This document shows, in pieces, positions 3,669 to 46,921 of a stretch of 64,000 bases of DNA (position 1 is the first letter of the stretch; each line of letters starts with the position of its first letter). Under the pieces are notes generated by a model. The model did no database searches. It had not been told where the DNA came from and saw only the letters and a list, made by a program, of their open reading frames with translations. A program made the position numbers and the translations under genes. The DNA is taken from positions 248,001 through 312,000 of IMG/VR virus record IMGVR_UViG_3300020469_003050, one strand, 5' to 3'.

Positions 3669-4310
3669 ATGAAAAAAGTAAAGAGTACAATTATACCACA
3701 ACCCAAAGAACAACCGGCACCACCCCCACCCCCTCCGATGCCAACTCCGCCAGTACCACCAAAGCAGGCAGGTGAGTTCTTAAGAGAGAATGGTGTATTG
3801 TTCATGGACAAAGAGTTCAACCAAGACAACTGTATGCCTCTTGTAAGAATGATTTTAGAATACAATCTGATGCCAAAAGATAAAGCACCAGATATTATTC
3901 ACTTATATATTAATTCACCAGGTGGTTTGGTAGACAGTTGTATGCATCTAATTGATACAATCAAACAATCACGTATTCCAGTATATACATATGGAATGGG
4001 TTCTATTGCAAGTTGTGGAGTTATGTTGATGATGAGTGGTGTAAAAGGTCATCGTTATGTCACACAAAATACCGCAGTAATGTCACATGAATTCTCAGGT
4101 GGTCAAAAAGGTCAATATCATGATATGTTAGATAGTAAAAAACATATGGATTGGACTAACGAAAAGTTATTAGAACATTATATCAAGTGTACAGGTAAAA
4201 CAAAAACTTACATTCGTAAACATCTATTAGCACCCAAGACAGACCATTGGCTTACTCCAGAAGAAGCAGTTAAGCATGGTATCGCAGACGAATTAATTAC
4301 AACTTATTAA
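3669..4310 (+). CDS. clpP: ATP-dependent Clp protease proteolytic subunit with Pro-rich N-terminal extension
   Basis: IHLYINSPGG, IASCG (catalytic Ser), MSHE, WLTPEEAVKHGIADE. Confidence 0.9.
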   Translation: MKKVKSTIIPQPKEQPAPPPPPPMPTPPVPPKQAGEFLRENGVLFMDKEFNQDNCMPLVRMILEYNLMPKDKAPDIIHLYINSPGGLVDSCMHLIDTIKQSRIPVYTYGMGSIASCGVMLMMSGVKGHRYVTQNTAVMSHEFSGGQKGQYHDMLDSKKHMDWTNEKLLEHYIKCTGKTKTYIRKHLLAPKTDHWLTPEEAVKHGIADELITTY

Positions 4311-31651: not shown

Positions 31652-31708
31652 AAATCAACTAAATACAATAGGGTATTATGATATACCCGCAAAACAAAGG
31701 AGATTAAT

Positions 31709-31870
31709 ATGATGAAATGGATAAAAGATAGAACCAAAGAAAGAACATCATGGGATGGTGCAGTTTGTATAGCACTAGGTCTTATGATTTTATTCATGGC
31801 ACCTCTGGCAAAAATAGCGGCAGGCCTTGCTATTGCATGGGGCGTTTGGACAATCTGGAAATCAGAGTAA
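31709..31870 (+). CDS. 53-aa 2-TM membrane protein (holin-like candidate)
   Basis: Not in ORF track; AAGGAG SD, CTAAATA box upstream; MMKWIKDRTKERTSWDGAVCIALGLMIL...GVWTIWKSE; tandem Met-Met. Confidence 0.7.
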   Translation: MMKWIKDRTKERTSWDGAVCIALGLMILFMAPLAKIAAGLAIAWGVWTIWKSE

Positions 31871-31887
31871 GATTGTGAATTTTCTGT

Positions 31888-32106
31888 ATGACACCTGAAT
31901 TCCGAAAAGAAGCATACCGTATGTTTTGGCTCGTAAAGGGCCATCTTGGGTGTCATACGTGGCCAGACGAAGACATTATCAAAATGCATGATAGTTATTT
32001 TGTAAGAAATTGGAGATCCGGATGCGACGGAGCGCCGCATTATGAGAGAGAAGAAGGATTTGAAGAAGCATACGAGGAAATAATTGGAACAGAAAATACC
32101 CCCTAG
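31888..32106 (+). CDS. Hypothetical protein
   Basis: AYRMFWLVKGHL..DSYF..EEGFEEAY. Confidence 0.65.
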   Translation: MTPEFRKEAYRMFWLVKGHLGCHTWPDEDIIKMHDSYFVRNWRSGCDGAPHYEREEGFEEAYEEIIGTENTP

Positions 32107-32335
32107 ATTAATACTTTTGTCTGAGTTTTTAGACCAGAGCAAAAGAAAAGAAGATGAAATTCACTTTTATGAAAAGGAACTCAGAAAGATTGAAGAAAAA
32201 CTATATTGGCTACGTAGAGAAAAAAATCTAACAGAAACGATTATCAATATAATCACTCAGGAAAAAGTTGTCGATATTAAAGAAGAAATGGAAAAGCGAT
32301 ACCTAGCAGAAAGAGAAACACAAGAAGATAAATAA
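32084..32335 (+). CDS. Coiled-coil hypothetical protein
   Basis: GAGG SD, TTG start. Confidence 0.65.
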   Translation: MEQKIPPRLILLSEFLDQSKRKEDEIHFYEKELRKIEEKLYWLRREKNLTETIINIITQEKVVDIKEEMEKRYLAERETQEDK

Positions 32336-32355
32336 AAAAGAAAAAAGGCGAAGTA

Positions 32356-32733
32356 ATGGATTTATTTTTATTCTACCTTGCAGTAAGCGTAATCGTTACT
32401 TCAAGTCTCATCATATATTTTAGAGAACATTTAAGAAAGCAGATTGGCTGGTACTTACTAGGCATGTTGGCCTTTATGGTCATTACAAACTGGAACGAGT
32501 ACTGGTGGATGATGTTTTTTAGTTTGGTAGTATTTTTTCAAGTTCCACCATTTAGTGTGGAAGAAAAACTACTTACAAAGGCCGCTAATTCGGACAACCG
32601 GTTCAAGAGGTGGCAACGGAAGAAAGGAAAGTTTGTACAATTTATAGTATACATTTTATGTATGATATTATTGAGTGCATTCGTTACCTGGATTTCAGGC
32701 GATGGAAATATACATTTCATCTTGATAGGATAG
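32356..32733 (+). CDS. Hypothetical membrane protein
   Basis: 3-4 TM segments. Confidence 0.65.
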   Translation: MDLFLFYLAVSVIVTSSLIIYFREHLRKQIGWYLLGMLAFMVITNWNEYWWMMFFSLVVFFQVPPFSVEEKLLTKAANSDNRFKRWQRKKGKFVQFIVYILCMILLSAFVTWISGDGNIHFILIG

Positions 32734-32821
32734 CTATTGACTCACAATACAACCTATGATATAATGCAATTAGTATTAATCTAAGAACAGGATTAGTATG
32801 GACTTAACTAAGGAGGATGTT

Positions 32822-33175
32822 ATGAAAACATCAATTATCGGACTGCTAGTCGCAGTCTTTTTTTCTGCAACGGCGTTTGCAGAAGACACAAGTGTATCAA
32901 ATGATATTTCTTGGTCTCTAACATTAGAGAGACAAACAGAAGCAAATGCTAATACAGGCGAACTAATGGGGACTATGGAAGTTTTAGGACTTGATGTTTC
33001 TGCGGGTGGACTGTGGAACATTGATAAATCAGGTGAAGATTTTATTGACTTGAATAAAACGATGTTAAATGTTAGCCACTCGCTTTCTGACCAAGCAAAA
33101 GTGTATCTAAAGAATGACTTTAGTACAGATTGGGACAGAACTGAGTCAACAATAGGTCTACAAATTACGTTTTAA
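32822..33175 (+). CDS. Exported small beta-barrel/porin-like protein
   Basis: Signal peptide ending AFA; C-terminal IGLQITF beta-signal; promoter 32737-32765, AGGAGG SD. Confidence 0.65.
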   Translation: MKTSIIGLLVAVFFSATAFAEDTSVSNDISWSLTLERQTEANANTGELMGTMEVLGLDVSAGGLWNIDKSGEDFIDLNKTMLNVSHSLSDQAKVYLKNDFSTDWDRTESTIGLQITF

Positions 33176-33179
33176 TTTG

Positions 33180-33210
33180 TTGACAAAAACACCTCTATAG
33201 TGTATAAATA
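33180..33210 (+). promoter_or_regulatory. Overlapping early (TTGACA-17-TATAAA) and late (TATAAATA) promoter of tmRNA
   Basis: Both motifs share 33203-33208. Confidence 0.65.
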
Positions 33211-33215
33211 TAGAT

Positions 33216-33486
33216 GTTAACGTTGAAGCAAGTTCAACACTATACAGGACCTGGGGGCAGTACCCAGCAGGTCCACCATAAACACATTATCAGTTTGCAT
33301 TAGTGTGTTTATGATGGGCCTGAACTAGGATCGACTGGTGGTTAATAGGCGAGTGGAGTTAACCGAGTGACTTCGTTATTGGTCAAACACTATAATTGCA
33401 AACGACAATTATCAGCCAGAAATGGCAATGGCGGCCTAATTTAGGCACGTAGGGGTTGGTGACTTGCCTGGCAACAGAAAAGTCAC
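33216..33486 (+). ncRNA. ssrA: tmRNA, circularly permuted two-piece alphaproteobacterial type; tag ANDNYQPEMAMAA (33398-33439)
   Basis: Acceptor piece ends CTGGG-GGCAGTA-CCCAG-CAGGTCC-ACCA (33278); hairpin intervening segment; coding piece starts GGGCCTG (33316), giving a G3:U70 Ala acceptor stem. Confidence 0.95.
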
Positions 33487-33515
33487 ATTTTTATTTGGGA
33501 GTGGGTTTTTTGTAA

Positions 33516-33854
33516 ATGGCATACGTAGTAACGCAAGATTGTATAAAATGTAAGTATACTGATTGTGTGGAAGTTTGTCCCGTTGATTGCTTTTATGAGG
33601 GCAAAGATACTTTAGTTATTAACCCAGATGAATGTATAGATTGCGGTGTTTGTGAACCCGAATGTCCTGCAGAAGCAATAATTCCTGATACGCATGAAAA
33701 ATTTACAATGCGACTCTACGATATAAATAAAAAGTGGTCAGAACAATGGCCAGTAATTACAGAAAAGCAAGATCCCTTACCTGATGCTGATTCACTAAAT
33801 CCAGCAATGGGATATTCAGAAGATAAGACAAAGTTGTTAGATGAATACGATTGA
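33516..33854 (+). CDS. fdxA: 7Fe ferredoxin (FdxA type)
   Basis: [33 protein letters not shown]. Confidence 0.95.
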
Positions 33855-36845: not shown

Positions 36846-37062
36846 ATAAGCATAAAACAATTTAGCGGTTGTTTTATTGTAGTGCAAGGAAGAGGCTGTT
36901 ACCAGACGGTCGAACTTGACTAGTTAGGGGTGGTACCCAGGCTTAAAGCTGAGAGGCTAAGAGTCACATCGTTCTACCGAACGGAACTAGGTTCCCTGGA
37001 TTCAGAATGGTATCTGTGTCGAGGGGTTGGGGGTGTAACCAAGTCCCTCCTACTTTGCTTAT
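36846..37062 (+). ncRNA. Free-standing structured ncRNA, ~217 nt, family unassigned
   Basis: GC-rich island with no long ORF, between promoter and terminator; 5' ATAAGCA pairs with 3' TGCTTAT; internal stems. Confidence 0.75.
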
Positions 37063-37094: not shown

Positions 37095-37158
37095 AAGAGA
37101 CGGTTAGCAAACCATATTTTACTCACTTTCATTTCATATTGCTAACTGTCTCTTTTTT
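37095..37158. terminator. Long-loop hairpin terminator
   Basis: AAGAGACGGTTAGCAA / TTGCTAACTGTCTCTT + T run. Confidence 0.7.
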
Positions 37159-37852
37159 ATTTCTCTCCAATTATAGATTTTATTTTCCAAGGTGTAAAGC
37201 ATACAGTACCTAAACTTATGTGGTCTGCTCCTGCATCTATATAAGTCTGAGCATCTTCTTTAGAATATACTCCACCACCTGCTATGACTTCTACGTGAGG
37301 ATACTTATCTTTTATATAAGCAATAGTCCCCAAGGTATAGGGTTGAAGAATCTTTCCAGAAAGCCCACCCTTTTCACTGTGTAATGTGTTACTTGCATGA
37401 ATTTGTTTATATCCTTTATCTACTATTTTATCTATTAATTTATGTTTTGCAGTTGGAGGTATTTTAACTATACACCATTTATTCTGCATATGTTCTGGAA
37501 ACTTATCGAAACCTTCAAATGTCGTAGTGTCTTCATGTGAATCTAAGTTAGGACAACTTATATTTAATTCTATATTTCTAACACGACTAATAGTTGTTCT
37601 TATTGTTTCCCAATCTGATTTTTCTATGGCCGCAAGTGATAACAAATTATCATATGATGTCTTCATCATTCCAGCACGTAATCCAGGATTGCGTAAACCT
37701 AATTTGTTTCTCCAACCCTGTTTAGTATATCTTAATGTTTTGATTATTTGTTTTAGTCTTCCTGGTCTTGGTTCTACTGTCCAGGTACCTGTAACACTAA
37801 CTGTATCTTTAAAGTTGAGATAGTTTCCAAATGGTGCGGCTATAAAAAACAT
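37157..37852 (-). CDS. Dihydroorotate dehydrogenase-like flavoprotein (compact)
   Basis: NKLGLRNPG, ELNISCPN, SNT, GGLSG, IAGGGV, AGAD. Confidence 0.8.
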   Translation of the reverse strand: MFFIAAPFGNYLNFKDTVSVTGTWTVEPRPGRLKQIIKTLRYTKQGWRNKLGLRNPGLRAGMMKTSYDNLLSLAAIEKSDWETIRTTISRVRNIELNISCPNLDSHEDTTTFEGFDKFPEHMQNKWCIVKIPPTAKHKLIDKIVDKGYKQIHASNTLHSEKGGLSGKILQPYTLGTIAYIKDKYPHVEVIAGGGVYSKEDAQTYIDAGADHISLGTVCFTPWKIKSIIGEK

Positions 37853-37886: not shown

Positions 37887-38708
37887 TTATTTCTTATCTA
37901 GTGCAGAAATCATCCTAGTCATTCCAATTCCTCCACCAACTCTTGGGAAGAAATCAAATTCTAAGAATTTTTCTAGTTCTGCTTCTACTCTTTCTTTAGA
38001 AAATAGTTTGTACAATAATTCTGAGTATTCACCATTTGTTATTGTGTGAAAAGTATCTCTCATCATTTCTACATCACATGAACGTTCTGCGGATCCAATA
38101 GTTTCCATTCCACCTAAGATAACATCTATCTTCTTACTAGTTGCACCGCCTTCATTTCTGCTCATATTCCAGAACGGAGATGTCATTTCAGGAAAATCTG
38201 TAATCATTGTTGAACCGAATTCTTCAAACATTTTAGTTTCATGTTCTGCTTCCATTTCTACTGTTGGTTCTAAGTTGTAATGTTTTTGCCAATCAGCATA
38301 TGTTCTTTCTTCTGGTTTAGGGAACTCTAAGTATTCACATAGTTCGTATTCCATCTTTTTCAAATCATCAATGTCACCTGGCATTTCAAATTCAAACATT
38401 GGGAAGATAATATCGTGTCTACCTGGAATTGCATTTGGCTCTTGTCTATAGGACGTGGAGACACAAAAAAAGCCCTTTGTATCGGGCTTTGAGAGTAATT
38501 CGTGTTCTAACCACATTTGGCCTGTTTGGGGAAGCGGCCAGACTTGGCCTGCGTAATTGTATGTTGCTACATTGAACGGGTCTTCACATGCCGCCAATAT
38601 AGATAATCTGTTTTGGGTATGGACTTCTAAAAATCCTTTATCCAAAAAAAATGACCTTAAAAGGCCAACTGTTCTTGTAAATTTATCCGGAGATATTAAT
38701 TGTGTCAT
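37887..38708 (-). CDS. Asx-tRNA-synthetase catalytic-domain-only paralog (asparagine synthetase-like)
   Basis: GFLEVHT, LPQTGQ, SYRQE..GRH..FEFE, ETIGSAER, GGGIGMTR; no anticodon-binding domain; minus-strand late box 38783-38790. Confidence 0.8.
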   Translation of the reverse strand: MTQLISPDKFTRTVGLLRSFFLDKGFLEVHTQNRLSILAACEDPFNVATYNYAGQVWPLPQTGQMWLEHELLSKPDTKGFFCVSTSYRQEPNAIPGRHDIIFPMFEFEMPGDIDDLKKMEYELCEYLEFPKPEERTYADWQKHYNLEPTVEMEAEHETKMFEEFGSTMITDFPEMTSPFWNMSRNEGGATSKKIDVILGGMETIGSAERSCDVEMMRDTFHTITNGEYSELLYKLFSKERVEAELEKFLEFDFFPRVGGGIGMTRMISALDKK

Positions 38709-38965
38709 TTTCTTTTCCTTTTTGTTATCCAAAAAAAAATATAGCCAAAAAAAAATTTGGTATTCGTTTTTGATGTTGTTTTTATTTATCTTTTTTATTT
38801 AAAAAGTTATCAACAATTCAATTAAAAATTGTATTGATTTCATATCTATTTTGTGTTACATTTATAAATATGAAAGTAACAATGAGGTTACAACCAGGCA
38901 CCAATCGAGCCTGGTCTAATTATGTGAGCACCGTGGTAAAGACGGTAAGCAGAAGGAGATAAAAA

Positions 38966-43178: not shown

Positions 43179-44453
43179 TTGGCTGACAAAAAAGATTATC
43201 ATTGTTCATTTTGTGGGAAACATAAGAATGAAATTAGTACATTAATTGCAGGTCCTTCGACATTTATCTGTAATGAATGTATTGACCTATGTCACTCTAT
43301 CGTATATGAACGCAAGAATGTAACTAAAAAATCTAAAACTGTAAACAGTGACATTCCGACACCTGACGAAATTAATGAGTTTTTGAATGCTCATGTAATT
43401 GGTCAGGGAGAAGCTAAAGAAGTCCTGAGTGTGGCTGTTTACAATCATTATAAAAGAATTAATCAATCAGAAGATGATGATGTAGAGTTAGAGAAATCTA
43501 ATGTTATGATGCTCGGTCCTTCTGGTACAGGTAAAACACTCTTAGCAAAAACAATCGCAAAATTCTTAGATGTTCCTTTCGCACAAGTCGATGCAACTAC
43601 ATTAACAGAAAGTGGTTATGTAGGTGAAGATGTTGAAAACGTAATACAACGTTTACTTATGAATGCAGACTTTGAAATTAAGAAAGCAGAACAGGGTATT
43701 ATCTACATAGATGAGATAGATAAGAAAGCTAAAAAGGGTGAAAGTATTTCAATCACTAAAGATGTTAGTGGTGAAGGTGTTCAACAAGCCTTATTAAAAA
43801 TTGTTGAAGGCACTGTTGTTCGTGTTCCGCCAGGTGGTGGGAGAAAACATCCAGGTGCTGATATGCTTGAAGTTAATACTGATAACATTTTATTCATTGT
43901 AGGTGGTGCATTTGTAGGACTTGATAAAGTAATCAAACGAAGATTGAATTCAAATGGTTCAATTGGTTTTGGTGCAAGAGTTATGGCACAAGATAGCAGT
44001 GATGATATGACAGTATCACAAGAAGTGTTGCCAGAAGACGTAATTAAATATGGTATCATTCCAGAATTTATGGGTCGTTTTCCAATACTTGTAGGCATAG
44101 ACGATTTAACTGAACGTGAGTTAAGTCGTATATTAACAGAACCTAAGAATAATTTAACTGCACAATTTAAGAAGATTTTTAAATTAGATGGTGTAGATTT
44201 AAATTTTACTGAGGATGCAATAACAGAGATATCTAAAATAGCAAAAAAGAATAAGACTGGAGCAAGAGGTCTAAGAAGTGTTTTAGAAAAGTCATTGTTA
44301 AAATTACAATTCAAATTACCTAAGCTATCAAAGAATGCTGGCTTAACGTCTGTTGAAATAACTGGTGACTTTATTAATAAAAATGCTGATCCAATTTTGG
44401 TATTTAAGGATGAAACAGAGGAAAATATAAACATTAATGAAAAGAAACTTTAA
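43179..44453 (+). CDS. clpX: ATP-dependent Clp protease ATPase ClpX
   Basis: CSFCGK..ICNEC ZBD, GPSGTGKT, GYVGEDVE, GGRKHP, IGF loop, TGARGL. Confidence 0.97.
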   Translation: MADKKDYHCSFCGKHKNEISTLIAGPSTFICNECIDLCHSIVYERKNVTKKSKTVNSDIPTPDEINEFLNAHVIGQGEAKEVLSVAVYNHYKRINQSEDDDVELEKSNVMMLGPSGTGKTLLAKTIAKFLDVPFAQVDATTLTESGYVGEDVENVIQRLLMNADFEIKKAEQGIIYIDEIDKKAKKGESISITKDVSGEGVQQALLKIVEGTVVRVPPGGGRKHPGADMLEVNTDNILFIVGGAFVGLDKVIKRRLNSNGSIGFGARVMAQDSSDDMTVSQEVLPEDVIKYGIIPEFMGRFPILVGIDDLTERELSRILTEPKNNLTAQFKKIFKLDGVDLNFTEDAITEISKIAKKNKTGARGLRSVLEKSLLKLQFKLPKLSKNAGLTSVEITGDFINKNADPILVFKDETEENININEKKL

Positions 44454-44982
44454 AGATGAAAGAGGGCGAAAGCCTTTTATTATCGCTAACCAACGTATCC
44501 GTGCAGACGAGTTACGTGTGGTAACAGACCAAGGTGAGCAACTTGGTATCATGCAAAAAAATCAAGCACAACAAAAAGCGGATGCTGACGGATTAGATTT
44601 AGTTCTTATAGTTCCTAACGCCAATCCTCCTGTAGCAAAAATCATTAGTATAAATAAGTACAACTACGAAATCAAAAAACGTGAGAAAGAGAAGGCAAAA
44701 CTAGCCAGACAAAATTCAGTTGAAGTTAAAGAAGTTAAGTTCAGACCAGCTATAGGCGAGAATGACCTAAAGATGAAACTTAACCAAGTTCAAAAGTTTA
44801 TTGACAAAGGCAATAAAGTAAAAGTGACAATACAAATGAGGGGCAGGGAAAATGCAAAAGCTACAGAAGTTTTAGCATATTTCAATTCCCAAATCTCTGA
44901 ATACTTGAGTAGTTTTAAGTATGACCTTCCTCTAAAAACTAACGGGAATAGAATAATAGGTGTAATAATAAAAAATGACTAG
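44437..44982 (+). CDS. infC: Translation initiation factor IF-3
   Basis: NQRIRA..GEQLGI..LDLVLI..PPVAKI..KEVKFRPAIGEND..KVKV..RGRE. Confidence 0.95.
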   Translation: MKRNFKDERGRKPFIIANQRIRADELRVVTDQGEQLGIMQKNQAQQKADADGLDLVLIVPNANPPVAKIISINKYNYEIKKREKEKAKLARQNSVEVKEVKFRPAIGENDLKMKLNQVQKFIDKGNKVKVTIQMRGRENAKATEVLAYFNSQISEYLSSFKYDLPLKTNGNRIIGVIIKND

Positions 44983-45241
44983 TTACAATAATAGTTATAG
45001 AAACAAAAATAATAGAAATGATTTTTCACAAACAGGTAAATCAGGTCTAACAGTAGAAGTAAGAAACGGGCAGTTTGAAAGAGCATTAAGAAAGTTCAAA
45101 AAGAAAGTGCAAGAAGCAGGTATCATACAGGAAGTACGAGACAGAAAGGCTTATGTTAAACCAAGTGAAGTTAAACGTAAGGCTAGGGACGCCGGAAAAA
45201 AACGTTGGTACAGAAAAATGAAAATGCAGGAACTAGAATAA
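44975..45241 (+). CDS. rpsU: 30S ribosomal protein bS21 with N-terminal extension
   Basis: VEVRNGQFERALRKFKKKV..GIIQEVRDRKAYVKPSEVKRK. Confidence 0.92.
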   Translation: MTSYNNSYRNKNNRNDFSQTGKSGLTVEVRNGQFERALRKFKKKVQEAGIIQEVRDRKAYVKPSEVKRKARDAGKKRWYRKMKMQELE

Positions 45242-45267
45242 AAAAGGGGAACCTAAGTCCCCCTTTT
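45241..45267. terminator. Bidirectional terminator
   Basis: AAAAAGGGGA-ACCTAAG-TCCCCTTTT; same CCTAAG loop as at 23771. Confidence 0.8.
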
Positions 45268-45289
45268 AATCTTAATAATTATGTCTCTA

Positions 45290-45607
45290 TTAGAACAAAT
45301 GATTATCAGAGAATTCTTCAAAGATAGGTTGACTATCAGCAAATCCTTGCATTTGAGTACCGATAGCAGTTTCAATAGCATTCATAGTTTCGTTGTTTGG
45401 ATAAACAACTGTAATCATGCCTTCAAACTTATCAGCAGTCAATTCTTCTTTGTATTTTGTAGCATCATTCAAATCAATACCGTTATCAGAAAGAATTGTT
45501 CTCATAAGGTTGTAATATGAACTGTAGCTATTCTCAGAAATCAGTTGAGCATTATCGTCATATTGTTTCACAATATGTGGATAAAATACTTTTGTTTCTT
45601 TAATCAT
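45290..45607 (-). CDS. Hypothetical late protein
   Basis: GGAGG SD; minus-strand GATAAATA at 45645-45652. Confidence 0.7.
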   Translation of the reverse strand: MIKETKVFYPHIVKQYDDNAQLISENSYSSYYNLMRTILSDNGIDLNDATKYKEELTADKFEGMITVVYPNNETMNAIETAIGTQMQGFADSQPIFEEFSDNHLF

Positions 45608-45675
45608 AATAGGTGGCCTCCTAAAGTCTGTTTGATTATACTGTTATTTATCAAAATTAAAATAAGGATTGTGAA

Positions 45676-45921
45676 TTGGATATAGATTTAGACAAATTAT
45701 CACTAAGAGAACTGCAACAAGAAAGCACCAGAGCATTGCTTACGCAGGACGGAACTAGTGTAGGTATCTCAAAATACAACAAAAAAGCTAATCATAATAG
45801 TCAATTATGGTACAAAGCAGTACTTGAAGACTATATTGAGAAATATGGTGGTTTACCTCGTGATGCAGGCCCATCTAAGGGAATTGTACTTTTTTCAGAA
45901 AAACTTGATAAAGGCACTTGA
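45676..45921 (+). CDS. Hypothetical protein
   Basis: TTG start, AAGGA SD. Confidence 0.6.
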   Translation: MDIDLDKLSLRELQQESTRALLTQDGTSVGISKYNKKANHNSQLWYKAVLEDYIEKYGGLPRDAGPSKGIVLFSEKLDKGT

Positions 45922-45979
45922 CATTTGGAAAAAAATCACTATATTATAATATATGCATAAAATTATGCATAAATAACTG

Positions 45980-46039
45980 TGTAGATTGCTTTAGATAGGA
46001 TCTACATTTAAATTAACTTGCTTAATAAAGGAGTAAACA
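45980..46039 (+). promoter_or_regulatory. ROSE-like RNA thermometer in hsp20 5'UTR
   Basis: ACUU(G)CUU pairs with AAGGAGU with a bulged G (UUGCU motif); upstream hairpin TGTAGAT/ATCTACA. Confidence 0.65.
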
Positions 46040-46483
46040 ATGACAAACGGACTATCTATTTTTAACCAGTTACGACCTGTAACTGTAGGCTTTGACAACA
46101 TGTTTGACCACTTTGAACGTATGTTCGATGGCGATGTTGCAACATTTCAAACTCAAGTAAACTTCCCACCTTACAATATCGTAAAGACTGGAGATTTCAC
46201 TTATGATGTAGAACTAGCATTAGCTGGATTCTCAAAAGATGATATTACAGTTGACTATGCTGATAACATTTTGACGGTTAAATCTGTTAAGAAAGAAAAA
46301 TCAGATGATGATAAAGACGGTGTTCTTCACAGAGGTATCTCTAAAAGAATGTTCTCTAAAGCATTCACTATTGCAGATGATGTTGAAGTGAAAGGTGCAG
46401 AGTTGAAAGACGGGTTACTGAAAATATCTTTAGAACGTATCGTTCCAGAAGGTAAGAAGCCTCGTAATATCGAAATATCATAA
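46040..46483 (+). CDS. Small heat-shock protein (Hsp20/IbpA-like)
   Basis: VGFD, FPPYNI, ELALAGF, LHRGIS.R.F, GAELKDGLL. Confidence 0.95.
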   Translation: MTNGLSIFNQLRPVTVGFDNMFDHFERMFDGDVATFQTQVNFPPYNIVKTGDFTYDVELALAGFSKDDITVDYADNILTVKSVKKEKSDDDKDGVLHRGISKRMFSKAFTIADDVEVKGAELKDGLLKISLERIVPEGKKPRNIEIS

Positions 46484-46501
46484 AATATTTCTAATCAAAA
46501 T

Positions 46502-46531
46502 AAAAGCGAGGGATTCGTTCCTCGCTTTTTT
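46502..46531 (+). terminator. Intrinsic terminator
   Basis: AAAAGCGAGG..CCTCGCTTTTTT. Confidence 0.85.
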
Positions 46532-46606
46532 ATATAAAAATCACTTGATAAATTCCTTTATAAATGCTATAATACAGATAAATACTATAGACAGTGAGGA
46601 AAATAA

Positions 46607-46921
46607 ATGCACGTACAAAACGATAGTGAAACAGTAGTTGATGCATCTACTAGGACTTCAATAGAACCTCCTAAGAGATATTATATTGTTATGCATAATG
46701 ATGATTCAACTCCTATAGATTTTGTAGTAAAGGTGTTAATCGAACTGTATAAACACGAAGACCAAACGGCGGCTGACCTAGCAAATAAAATTCACATAGA
46801 TGAAAAAGCTATTGTCGGCATGTTCAATTTAGAAATAGCAGAACAGAAGGTGGAAGAGACTCACGGAACAAGTAGGGCGCATGGTTACCCATTAACGGTA
46901 ACATTAGAACAAGCAGATTAA
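46607..46921 (+). CDS. clpS: N-degron adaptor ClpS
   Basis: PPKRY.IVMHNDDSTPIDFVV..IH..EIAEQK..YPL; early promoter 46545-46573 plus late box 46577. Confidence 0.92.
   Translation: MHVQNDSETVVDASTRTSIEPPKRYYIVMHNDDSTPIDFVVKVLIELYKHEDQTAADLANKIHIDEKAIVGMFNLEIAEQKVEETHGTSRAHGYPLTVTLEQAD

What the first reader, a model, noticed from the sequence alone, without database searches (positions are those of the whole stretch)
33180..33486. Phage-encoded circularly permuted two-piece tmRNA of alphaproteobacterial type
Seen: the 3' acceptor half (T-arm with GGCAGTA loop, CAGGTCC-A-CCA) precedes a hairpin spacer and the 5' half GGGCCTG, giving a G3:U70 pair; the tag is ANDNYQPEMAMAA. Overlapping early and late promoters suggest expression throughout infection. 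Established: permutation, the GGCRGUA T-loop and ANDN tags mark alphaproteobacterial tmRNA. This is the best host indicator in the window, and permuted tmRNAs are missed by many annotators.
Basis: partly seen in the sequence, partly recalled or inferred. Interest (0 to 1): 0.62.

Follow-up and report, generated by a model that had tools for sequence, protein, structure and literature searches.

The report
Jumbo-phage two-piece tmRNA gene

Summary
ARAGORN and two Rfam models (alpha_tmRNA 122.6 bits, tmRNA_permuted 114.4 bits) call a permuted tmRNA at 33167-33530 with the tag ANDNYQPEMAMAA. The window lies in a 342.6-kb, 34.8% GC, T4-related jumbo myovirus of the Rak2/PA5oct/Sinorhizobium-phage capsid group.

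Across 51 viral relatives the acceptor stem, G3:U70, T-arm, long-range helices and excised hairpin show strong covariation. The composite promoter TTGACA-N17-TATAAATA is kept in 31 of the 51. It occurs once in this genome and is absent from cellular tmRNA genes, which supports the early-plus-late idea by comparison, not by experiment.

The phage has no SmpB. It does encode ClpX, ClpA, ClpP, ClpS, Hsp20, IF-3, S21 and peptide deformylase.

The host claim is unsafe. In a tree this tmRNA falls in a viral lineage outside all 44 sampled cellular alphaproteobacterial tmRNAs. The only "cellular" close hits are mis-binned phage contigs. The nearest cultured-phage copy is in Melnitz, a phage whose host is not an alphaproteobacterium.

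Phage two-piece tmRNAs are published (Buchholz 2022; Sinorhizobium phage AP-J-162). Verdict: real, probably functional, a new member of a known kind, of moderate interest.

The parts
33180..33185 (+). -35 hexamer TTGACA of a sigma-70-type promoter
   Evidence: Sequence. One of 83 intergenic sigma70-like sites in the genome. A -35 with at most one mismatch is conserved 17 nt upstream of TATAAATA in 31 of 51 viral tmRNA loci.
33203..33210 (+). TATAAATA: a -10 element (TATAAA) that overlaps a T4-type late-promoter core (ATAAATA)
   Evidence: ATAAATA is the top enriched upstream 7-mer (z=24). There are 60 sites before genes, many of them structural. TATAAATA is present in 35 of 51 viral tmRNA loci and in 1 of 44 cellular ones. 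It is the only site in G000 that combines a perfect -35 with ATAAATA.
33216..33278 (+). Acceptor piece (63 nt): 5' strands of the long-range helices P2a (33216-20), P2c (33241-43) and P2d (33245-47); T-arm (33251-67, loop GGCAGUA); acceptor 3' strand (33268-74); discriminator A; encoded CCA (33276-78)
   Evidence: Rfam alignment. Covariation: T stem 100% paired, acceptor stem 99.7%, P2a 87.8%, P2c/d 88.4%. A metatranscriptome contig ends exactly at 33278; this is a hint only.
33279..33315 (+). Intervening segment, predicted to be excised; a hairpin whose base is conserved (UAAACACAUU...AGUGUGUUUAUGAU)
   Evidence: MFE hairpin of 13 bp. 89.1% paired, with compensatory changes in 9 of 9 counted pairs across 51 viral loci. 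Its length ranges from a few nt to several hundred nt in relatives.
33316..33496 (+). Coding piece: acceptor 5' strand GGGCCUG (33316-22, G3 pairs with U70); conserved AACUAGGAUCGAC; 3' strands of P2d/c (33335-40) and P2a (33359-63); small hairpin 33364-75; tag reading frame; 3' hairpin
   Evidence: G3:U70 wobble in 50 of 51 relatives.
33398..33439 (+). Tag reading frame GCA...GCC TAA = ANDNYQPEMAMAA*
   Evidence: ARAGORN. The same tag family (ANDN-Y/H/N-Q/A-PEMA-L/M-AA) occurs in 9 IMG/VR contigs (L016, L020, L025, L026, L049, L050, L061, L066, L115) and in the related jumbo contig C57.
33459..33496 (+). 3' terminal hairpin (GUGACUU/AAGUCAC, loop holding the conserved CCUGGCAACAGAA) plus a U-run: a likely intrinsic terminator and 3' end of the coding piece
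   Evidence: Fold. The loop sequence matches the RF01849 consensus. The simple terminator scan did not list it because the loop exceeds 8 nt.
43179..44453 (+). Phage ClpX (zf-C4_ClpX + AAA_2 + ClpB_D2-small); inferred handler of tagged proteins
   Evidence: The functional link to the tag is inference.
46607..46921 (+). Phage ClpS adaptor, next to Hsp20 (46040-46483)
3669..4310 (+). ClpP-family protein (113 bits). The canonical ClpP (259 bits) lies outside the window at G000:C1:167039-167635, and ClpA at G000:C1:14634-16850.

Best explanation
This is a complete, expressed-looking ssrA gene carried by a lytic, T4-related marine jumbo phage.

Proposed mechanism:
1. Host RNA polymerase starts near 33216. 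Early in infection it uses sigma-70 (TTGACA-N17-TATAAA). Late in infection it probably uses the phage gp55-like sigma at the overlapping TATAAATA.
2. The precursor folds so that the acceptor stem closes around a conserved hairpin (33279-33315).
3. That hairpin is cut out. This leaves a 63-nt acceptor piece ending in the encoded CCA and a coding piece of about 175 nt beginning at G33316. The two are held together by the acceptor stem and the P2 helices.
4. Host AlaRS charges the RNA through G3:U70.
5. Host SmpB, since the phage has none, delivers it to stalled ribosomes.
6. Translation resumes at GCA (33398) and appends ANDNYQPEMAMAA.
7. Tagged proteins are then degraded by Clp proteases, which the phage also supplies (ClpX, ClpA, ClpP, ClpS).

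The likely benefit is to keep ribosomes free for phage protein synthesis when host mRNA decay creates non-stop messages.

Shown here: gene identity, architecture, structural conservation, promoter conservation, and gene content. Inferred: transcription timing, processing, charging, dependence on host SmpB, the fate of the tag, and the benefit.
For: - ARAGORN and two covariance models call it.
- Covariation in 51 viral relatives: 87.7% paired against 36-44% with slid partners, and 0 of 500 shuffles reach the observed score. The acceptor stem is 99.7% paired, G3:U70 holds in 50 of 51, the T stem is 100% paired, and the excised hairpin has 9 of 9 compensatory pairs.
- The gene is kept in related jumbo phages that share only about 42% protein identity (C57, G002:C8, G013:C5), and in the cultured Sinorhizobium phage Phosso.
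- The promoter cassette is conserved. A gp55-like sigma is present and ATAAATA is enriched upstream of genes.
- Tags in the lineage nearly always end in (L/I/M/V)AA.
- Phage ClpX, ClpA, ClpP and ClpS are present.
- RNA-library contigs match the locus exactly up to the CCA 3' end at 33278.
- The sequence recurs in marine metagenomes from about 13 studies.
- Published precedent exists (PMC9004378, PMC11242549).
Against: - There is no direct evidence of transcription start, cleavage, charging or tagging.
- RNA-library contigs do not cover the coding piece exactly. Contig ends prove nothing, and DNA can be present in such libraries.
- The phage has no SmpB, so function depends on an unknown host's SmpB accepting a divergent tRNA-like domain.
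- The Rfam score (122.6 bits) is much lower than for cellular alpha tmRNAs (183-233 bits).
- Helix P2b of the Rfam model is not supported (47% paired). Pseudoknot PK1 was not tested.
- The late-promoter flanks at the tmRNA (T at -1, T at +1) are minority variants of this phage's G-ATAAATA-C/G consensus.
- gp33 and gp45 were not found by tblastn.
- ClpS is known to steer ClpA away from ssrA-tagged substrates (established knowledge), so the Clp set need not serve the tag.
Confidence: 0.8

Rival explanations
1. The RNA is functional, but its main role is not general ribosome rescue. It could be a phage tool that tags selected (host) proteins for destruction by the phage's own ClpXP/ClpAP to recycle amino acids or shut down the host. 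It could also compete with the host tmRNA for SmpB.
For: - The phage carries ClpX, ClpA, ClpP and ClpS.
- Tags in the viral lineage are hypervariable in length and sequence, 9 to 31 aa.
- One relative (L018) has a 90.6% identical tRNA-like domain but a wholly different 31-aa tag.
- Buchholz et al. raise the amino-acid recycling idea (PMC9004378).
Against: tmRNA acts only on stalled ribosomes, so selectivity would need an extra factor, and none was identified. The tag keeps the canonical ANDN start and AA-COOH end. There are no data on targets.
Confidence: 0.12
2. It is a decaying or neutral passenger: a tmRNA gene picked up from a cell or another phage and no longer used.
For: Low Rfam score relative to cellular copies. 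No SmpB in the phage. No exact RNA-library contig over the coding piece.
Against: Strong compensatory covariation and invariant identity elements across a diverse viral lineage. A conserved promoter cassette. An intact tag frame ending in AA in relatives. Retention across jumbo phages at about 42% protein identity.
Confidence: 0.05
3. It is an attP-type remnant or host DNA: temperate phages that integrate into ssrA carry a piece of it, or the assembly is chimeric.
For: ssrA is a common integration site, and fragments occur in prophages (discussed in PMC9004378). Three IMG/VR contigs do carry cellular-type tmRNAs.
Against: - The gene is complete, with its own promoter and terminator.
- No tyrosine integrase in the genome.
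- The genome is a T4-like lytic type.
- The same context is found in about 13 independent studies.
- Relatives carry it too.
- It lies outside the cellular clade.
Confidence: 0.02

Closest known systems
SsrA of Methylophilales (OM43) phage Melnitz and related pelagimyophage-type marine phages (Buchholz et al. 2022, PMC9004378)
   Same: A phage-borne, two-piece, alpha-type tmRNA in a marine T4-like phage. It is the only cultured-phage tmRNA with BLAST similarity to ours (77.6% over 62%). It falls on the same viral side of the tree, has the same TTGACA-N17-TATAAATA cassette, and scores similarly low on Rfam (106.7 bits). The Melnitz locus also encodes ribosomal protein S21.
   Different: Melnitz is a 141-kb Kyanoviridae phage, whereas ours is a 343-kb Rak2/PA5oct-type jumbo phage. 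The Melnitz tag is ANDNYVPVDYALAA and its intervening segment is much longer. The Melnitz ssrA lies upstream of gp33 and a glutamine riboswitch; here the neighbour is a ferredoxin and no riboswitch was detected nearby.
tmRNA of Sinorhizobium jumbo phages AP-J-162 and Phosso (PMC11242549; PV764938.1)
   Same: Jumbo myoviruses of the same capsid group (MCP 67% identical). Phosso has an alpha-type permuted tmRNA (108 bits) preceded by TTGACT-N17-GTAAATA. AP-J-162 is reported to have a tmRNA, six Clp ORFs, clpX adjacent to IF-3, and Hsp20. Our window has the same clpX-IF-3 adjacency.
   Different: These are soil phages of Rhizobiales with 47% GC and 470-kb genomes. The Phosso tmRNA has a very long intervening insertion (a 690-nt match) that ARAGORN misses. 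Its tag was not determined here.
Cellular two-piece tmRNA of Alphaproteobacteria (Caulobacter ssrA; Keiler, Shapiro and Williams 2000; Rfam RF01849)
   Same: Permuted gene order, acceptor stem with G3:U70, GGCRGUA T-loop, P2 pairing between the two pieces, ANDN... tag, and a conserved CCUGGCAACAGAA 3' loop.
   Different: - It lacks the 5' leader hairpin of cellular genes; a promoter sits there instead.
- It scores 122.6 bits against 183-233 for cellular copies.
- It lies outside the clade of all sampled cellular copies.
- It has a shorter region after the stop codon.
- There is no smpB in the same genome.

Membership tests
Alphaproteobacterial-type permuted tmRNA (Rfam RF01849 / RF04321) | Covariance-model score above the curated gathering threshold over the full model | tested here: met
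   RF01849: 122.6 bits (threshold 50), model positions 1-355. RF04321: 114.4 bits (threshold 47), positions 1-213. Confirmed on the whole genome.
Alphaproteobacterial-type permuted tmRNA (Rfam RF01849 / RF04321) | Circular permutation: the 3' acceptor/T-arm half with encoded CCA lies upstream of the 5' acceptor strand and the tag frame | tested here: met
   CCA at 33276-78, G1 at 33316, tag at 33398-33439.
Alphaproteobacterial-type permuted tmRNA (Rfam RF01849 / RF04321) | 7-bp acceptor stem with the G3:U70 alanine identity pair, discriminator A, and a T-arm with a GGCRGUA loop | tested here: met
   Sequence. Conserved with compensatory changes: acceptor stem 99.7% paired, G:U in 50 of 51, T stem 100% paired.
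Alphaproteobacterial-type permuted tmRNA (Rfam RF01849 / RF04321) | Long-range P2 helices joining the two pieces | tested here: met
   P2a 87.8% and P2c/d 88.4% paired, with changes on both sides. P2b as drawn in the Rfam model is not supported (47%).
Alphaproteobacterial-type permuted tmRNA (Rfam RF01849 / RF04321) | Tag reading frame that starts at an Ala resume codon, begins ANDN and ends in hydrophobic-AA | tested here: met
   GCA AAC GAC AAT ... GCG GCC TAA = ANDNYQPEMAMAA.
Alphaproteobacterial-type permuted tmRNA (Rfam RF01849 / RF04321) | Pseudoknot PK1 upstream of the resume codon | not tested
   Only a small hairpin at 33364-75 was seen in the Rfam alignment. No pseudoknot analysis was done.
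Alphaproteobacterial-type permuted tmRNA (Rfam RF01849 / RF04321) | Processing into two RNAs, alanylation, SmpB binding and tagging activity | not testable with these tools
   The only hint is an RNA-library contig that ends exactly at the CCA 3' end, 33278.
Native (cellular) alphaproteobacterial ssrA lineage | Groups with cellular alphaproteobacterial tmRNAs in a tree; close copy present in a bacterial chromosome | tested here: not met
   It lies outside the SH-aLRT 99 clade holding all 44 sampled cellular copies. Among 401 class genomes only a mis-binned phage contig matches beyond the T-arm. Four of the five tag-pattern hits in the 185,579 species genomes scanned are tmRNA genes (L122/L127 and L125, both scoring like cellular copies, plus L124 and L126); L124 and L126 lie on mis-binned phage contigs, and L123 (Rhizobium) gave no tmRNA call.
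Native (cellular) alphaproteobacterial ssrA lineage | 5' leader hairpin upstream of P2, as in the RF01849 consensus | tested here: not met
   The leader hairpin columns align to the promoter with mismatches. The cellular loci shown have GCUG...CAGC there, whereas the viral loci have TATAAATA.
T4-type late promoter (gp55-dependent, TATAAATA) | TATAAATA core at the right distance from the RNA start, and a gp55 homologue in the genome | tested here: met
   TATAAATA at 33203-10, 5 nt before 33216. gp55-like sigma at G000:C1:179072-179944 (phrog_12791, E 3.4e-80). ATAAATA is enriched upstream of 56 genes.
T4-type late promoter (gp55-dependent, TATAAATA) | Co-activator gp33 and sliding clamp gp45 present; late transcription demonstrated | tested here: inconclusive
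   tblastn with Melnitz gp33 and T4 gp45 found nothing at E<1. These are small, divergent proteins, so absence is not shown. Transcription timing cannot be tested here.

The most novel reading that the evidence does not exclude
Marine T4-like phages, from 140-kb pelagimyophage-type genomes to 340-470-kb jumbo phages, may share their own lineage of two-piece tmRNA, distinct from every cellular one. It would travel as a self-contained cassette: a composite early-plus-late promoter (TTGACA-N17-TATAAATA), a leaderless acceptor piece, a conserved excised hairpin and a terminator. The tag module would evolve and swap quickly, ranging from 9 to 31 residues and sometimes identical to a cellular tag. 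In jumbo phages it would work with phage-encoded ClpXP/ClpA/ClpS as a virus-owned tag-and-degrade system that needs only the host's SmpB and AlaRS.
Probability: 0.45. Interest if true: 0.6.

Novelty: new member of a known kind. Interest (0 to 1): 0.4.

Why it matters
It adds a jumbo-phage example to the published set of phage two-piece tmRNAs.

It also shows three things of practical use:
1. An alpha-type tmRNA in a phage is not a dependable host marker, because these genes form a phage lineage of their own.
2. Such genes come with a conserved dual promoter and a conserved excised hairpin. These give concrete handles for testing when and how phage tmRNAs are made.
3. Jumbo-phage contigs carrying them are mis-binned into bacterial MAGs, where they can create false tmRNA or host-trait calls.

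The co-occurrence with phage ClpX, ClpA, ClpP and ClpS suggests a testable, virus-encoded protein quality-control module.

Tried and rejected
- **Plain TATAAATA count.** Counting TATAAATA upstream of genes looked unconvincing at first (8 sites, similar to AT-rich controls). De novo k-mer enrichment then showed that the 7-mer ATAAATA with a preceding G is the real motif.
- **Tag as a host clue.** The native tag of the small-genome order around 'Rickettsiales bacterium SAT45' is ANDNEMALAA, which resembles the phage tag with YQP inserted. The same tag occurs in high-GC alphaproteobacteria, so I rejected it as host-specific.
- **The 'cellular' hits.** G001:C57, G002:C8, G013:C5 and G013:C3 all turned out to be phage contigs binned into MAGs. 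They give no host evidence beyond weak co-binning.
- **SmpB, SspB, ArfB/RF-1 domain, tyrosine integrase.** None was found in the phage.
- **A riboswitch next to the tmRNA, as in Melnitz.** None was found at E<=1.
- **The simple terminator scan.** It missed the 3' hairpin because of its long loop.
- **Metatranscriptome data.** Runs were available only as contigs, so RNA ends and expression level could not be established.
- **Not used.** No structure prediction, complex prediction or large protein searches were run, because the question is about an RNA gene.

Full report

Yes.
- TTGACA at 33180-85, a 17-nt spacer, then TATAAATA at 33203-10.
- A T-arm CUGGG-GGCAGUA-CCCAG at 33251-67.
- CAGGUCC-A-CCA at 33268-78.
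- A 37-nt spacer (33279-33315) that folds into a 13-bp hairpin.
- GGGCCUG at 33316-22, whose G3 pairs with U70.
- The frame GCA...TAA at 33398-33439, encoding ANDNYQPEMAMAA.
- A 7-bp hairpin at 33459-86 followed by a T-run.

ARAGORN reports one permuted tmRNA in the window and in the whole genome. Rfam gives alpha_tmRNA 122.6 bits (E 6e-33) and tmRNA_permuted 114.4 bits (E 1.4e-21), both over the full model.

**2. What carries it?**

The window is bases 248001-312000 of a 342,607-bp IMG/VR virus record. The genome is 34.8% GC, has 10 tRNAs, and has a terminal overlap of about 94 bp.

Its conserved genes are those of a T4-related myovirus: gp43-type polymerase, gp23-like head protein, gp20 portal, gp17 terminase, gp21 protease, UvsX, gp32, gp46/47 and tail sheath. 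The head protein is 65-69% identical to those of Pseudomonas PA5oct, Vibrio 2.275.O, Salicola SCTP-2, Sinorhizobium Phosso, and the Serratia, Erwinia and Yersinia jumbo phages. The known hosts of that clade span Gamma- and Alphaproteobacteria.

No tyrosine integrase is present. The stretch recurs almost word for word in marine metagenomes from about 13 studies.

**3. Is the RNA under selection?**

A scan of IMG/VR with the T-arm pattern returned 120 loci, and ARAGORN found permuted tmRNAs in 77 of them.

I aligned 51 viral-type copies and counted pairs for the structure read off the Rfam alignment:
- Overall, 87.7% of cells are paired, against 36-44% when partners are slid. None of 500 shuffles reached the observed covariation.
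- The acceptor stem is 99.7% paired, with three pairs that change on both sides. G3:U70 is kept in 50 of 51 sequences.
- The T stem is 100% paired.
- P2a is 87.8% paired and P2c/d 88.4%.
- The hairpin in the intervening segment is 89.1% paired, with compensatory changes in all nine counted pairs.
- P2b of the Rfam model is not supported (47%).

The excised hairpin therefore looks like a functional processing element and not just a spacer.

**4. The promoter**

The genome has 83 intergenic sigma-70-like sites, and the tmRNA's TTGACA-17-TATAAA is one of them.

A de novo search showed that ATAAATA is by far the most enriched 7-mer upstream of genes: 56 genes against 4.7 expected. There are 60 sites within 70 nt of same-strand starts, with consensus G-ATAAATA-C/G, and many precede structural genes without any -35.

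A gp55-like late sigma factor is encoded at G000:C1:179072-179944 (phrog_12791, E 3.4e-80). T4 gp55 itself matches the orthologue in the relative C57.

The key evidence is comparative:
- 35 of 51 viral tmRNA loci have TATAAATA 5-8 nt before the acceptor piece. 31 of them also have TTGACA, with at most one mismatch, at 16-18 nt (17 nt in nearly all) upstream, and the spacers and flanks are unrelated.
- Cellular alphaproteobacterial tmRNA genes have a leader hairpin in that position. They lack the motif: 1 of 44, and at a different position.
- Inside G000 the composite is unique. It is 1 of 118 ATAAATA sites with a perfect -35, and 1 of 74 TTGAC(A/T)-N17 promoters with TATAAATA.

It remains untested, and the flanks at this site are minority variants of the late consensus.

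**5. Expression**

The RNA runs were available only as contigs. In one metatranscriptome (X17), exact-match contigs tile 31670-33278, and the last one ends exactly at the CCA 3' end, 33278. No exact contig covers the coding piece. The pieces that overlap it come from other organisms' tmRNAs.

This is compatible with cleavage at CCA, but it proves nothing.

**6. Partners**

No SmpB, SspB or RF-1/ArfB domain is encoded. The RNA must therefore use the host's SmpB and AlaRS.

The phage does encode:
- ClpX (window 43179-44453), directly followed by IF-3 and ribosomal protein S21.
- Hsp20 and ClpS (46040-46921).
- A canonical ClpP and a second ClpP-family protein.
- A ClpA-type unfoldase.
- A peptide deformylase 2.5 kb upstream of the tmRNA.

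The same clpX-IF-3 adjacency, six Clp ORFs, Hsp20 and a tmRNA are reported for Sinorhizobium jumbo phage AP-J-162 (PMC11242549). Its relative Phosso has an alpha-type permuted tmRNA preceded by TTGACT-N17-GTAAATA.

That the Clp set acts on the tag is inference.

**7. The host claim**

A degenerate tag pattern hit only 5 of the 185,579 species genomes scanned.
- One hit is a 335-kb contig in a 'Neomarinimicrobiota' MAG. It shares 176 ORFs with G000 at a median 42% identity, so it is a mis-binned jumbo phage.
- Another is a 29.9-kb contig in 'Rickettsiales bacterium SAT45'. It is syntenic with that phage, as are two contigs in a second MAG of the same order.

BLAST of our tmRNA against 401 genomes spread over the class found extended similarity only to that phage contig.

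In a tree of 124 tmRNAs, all 44 cellular copies plus 3 IMG/VR contigs form one clade (SH-aLRT 99). G000, C57, G013:C5, Melnitz and 73 IMG/VR contigs lie on the other side. These viral copies (G000, C57, G002:C8, two G013 copies, Melnitz, Phosso) score 106-145 bits on RF01849, against 183-233 for cellular ones.

The only cultured-phage copy with BLAST similarity is Melnitz SsrA. Melnitz infects OM43, not an alphaproteobacterium, and its authors already noted that mismatch (PMC9004378).

The native tag ANDNEMALAA of the SAT45 order resembles the phage tag, but it also occurs in high-GC alphaproteobacteria.

An alphaproteobacterial host, especially a low-GC streamlined marine one, remains plausible. 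The cultured relatives include Rhizobiales phages, the design is alpha-type, and relatives co-bin with such MAGs. The tmRNA alone does not establish it.

**8. Novelty**

Phage two-piece tmRNAs are published. Buchholz et al. counted 53 among 18,146 phage genomes, 50 of them from marine or aquatic samples. The finding is therefore a new member of a known kind.

I did not find the following stated in the papers I read:
- the clean separation of a viral lineage from cellular copies;
- the conserved composite promoter that replaces the cellular leader hairpin;
- the covarying excised hairpin;
- the association with a full phage Clp set.

These rest on sequence comparison only, with a cellular sample that is modest in size and unnamed.

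Noticed in passing
window 36861-37059 (+): manA RNA motif (RF01745, 59.8 bits against a threshold of 55.2). It is 74.7% identical to an unannotated stretch of Pelagibacter phage Mosig. It lies after an FkbM-type methyltransferase gene and faces two minus-strand genes, so its regulated target is unclear.
   Followed up: partly
L124/L130-L146 (G001:C57 = PBPT01000016.1, 335,231 bp); L235-L236 (G002:C8 = PALK01000009.1); L237, L238 (G013:C5, C3): Jumbo-phage contigs related to this phage are binned into bacterial MAGs: one 'Neomarinimicrobiota', and two from a small-genome alphaproteobacterial order. They give those MAGs spurious or extra alpha-type tmRNAs.
   Followed up: yes
window 43179-46921 (+): A translation and proteostasis gene cluster: ClpX, IF-3, ribosomal protein S21, an 81-aa ORF, Hsp20 and ClpS. 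The clpX-IF-3 adjacency is shared with Sinorhizobium phage AP-J-162.
   Followed up: partly
window 37887-38732 (-): A 281-aa protein consisting only of a class II aaRS catalytic core (PF00152), with no anticodon domain. It is 85% identical to the C57 orthologue and 80% identical at DNA level to genes annotated as 'tRNA ligase' in Prochlorococcus phages P-SSM2, P-SSM5 and P-SSM7. It could be an EpmA/GenX-like or AsnA-like enzyme.
   Followed up: no
G000:C1, e.g. 48160, 48882, 80842, 88555, 127558, 167640, 235432, 317235, 340307: A family of near-identical extended promoters, AAAACTTGACA-N7/8-GAATCGTGyTATAnT. This looks like a phage-specific early promoter class with an extended -10.
   Followed up: no
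L018:6832-7236 and other IMG/VR loci (L040, L081, L092, L102, L105): Viral tmRNA tags are hypervariable, from 9 to 31 residues. L018 has a tRNA-like domain 90.6% identical to ours but a 31-aa tag, ANATVNNGEFTFVNFGALNDFAVNEDFALAA, which suggests the tag region is swapped as a module.
   Followed up: partly
L097, L099, L101, L039, L056 versus L231 (G430): Five viral contigs carry the tag ANESYALAA, identical to that of a low-GC 1.3-Mb cellular genome. Their RNA bodies still sit on the viral side of the tree, so phage tmRNAs may be mimicking host tags.
   Followed up: no
window 33516-33854 (+): A 7Fe-type ferredoxin (Fer4 + DUF3470) starts 20 nt after the tmRNA's T-run. Its DNA is 74.8% identical to 'Ferredoxin 1' of two 328-378-kb metagenomic 'Acinetobacter phage MD-2021a' records.
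   Followed up: no
window 33229-33232 / 33350-33353: Helix P2b of the Rfam permuted-tmRNA models is not supported in the viral lineage (47% paired; the two inner pairs are unpaired in 42 of 51 sequences). The models may be mis-drawn for these RNAs.
   Followed up: partly
window 37157-37852 (-): A dihydroorotate-dehydrogenase-like (PF01180) 231-aa ORF, preceded by TATAAATA 22 nt upstream. It is 56% identical to a C57 protein.
   Followed up: no
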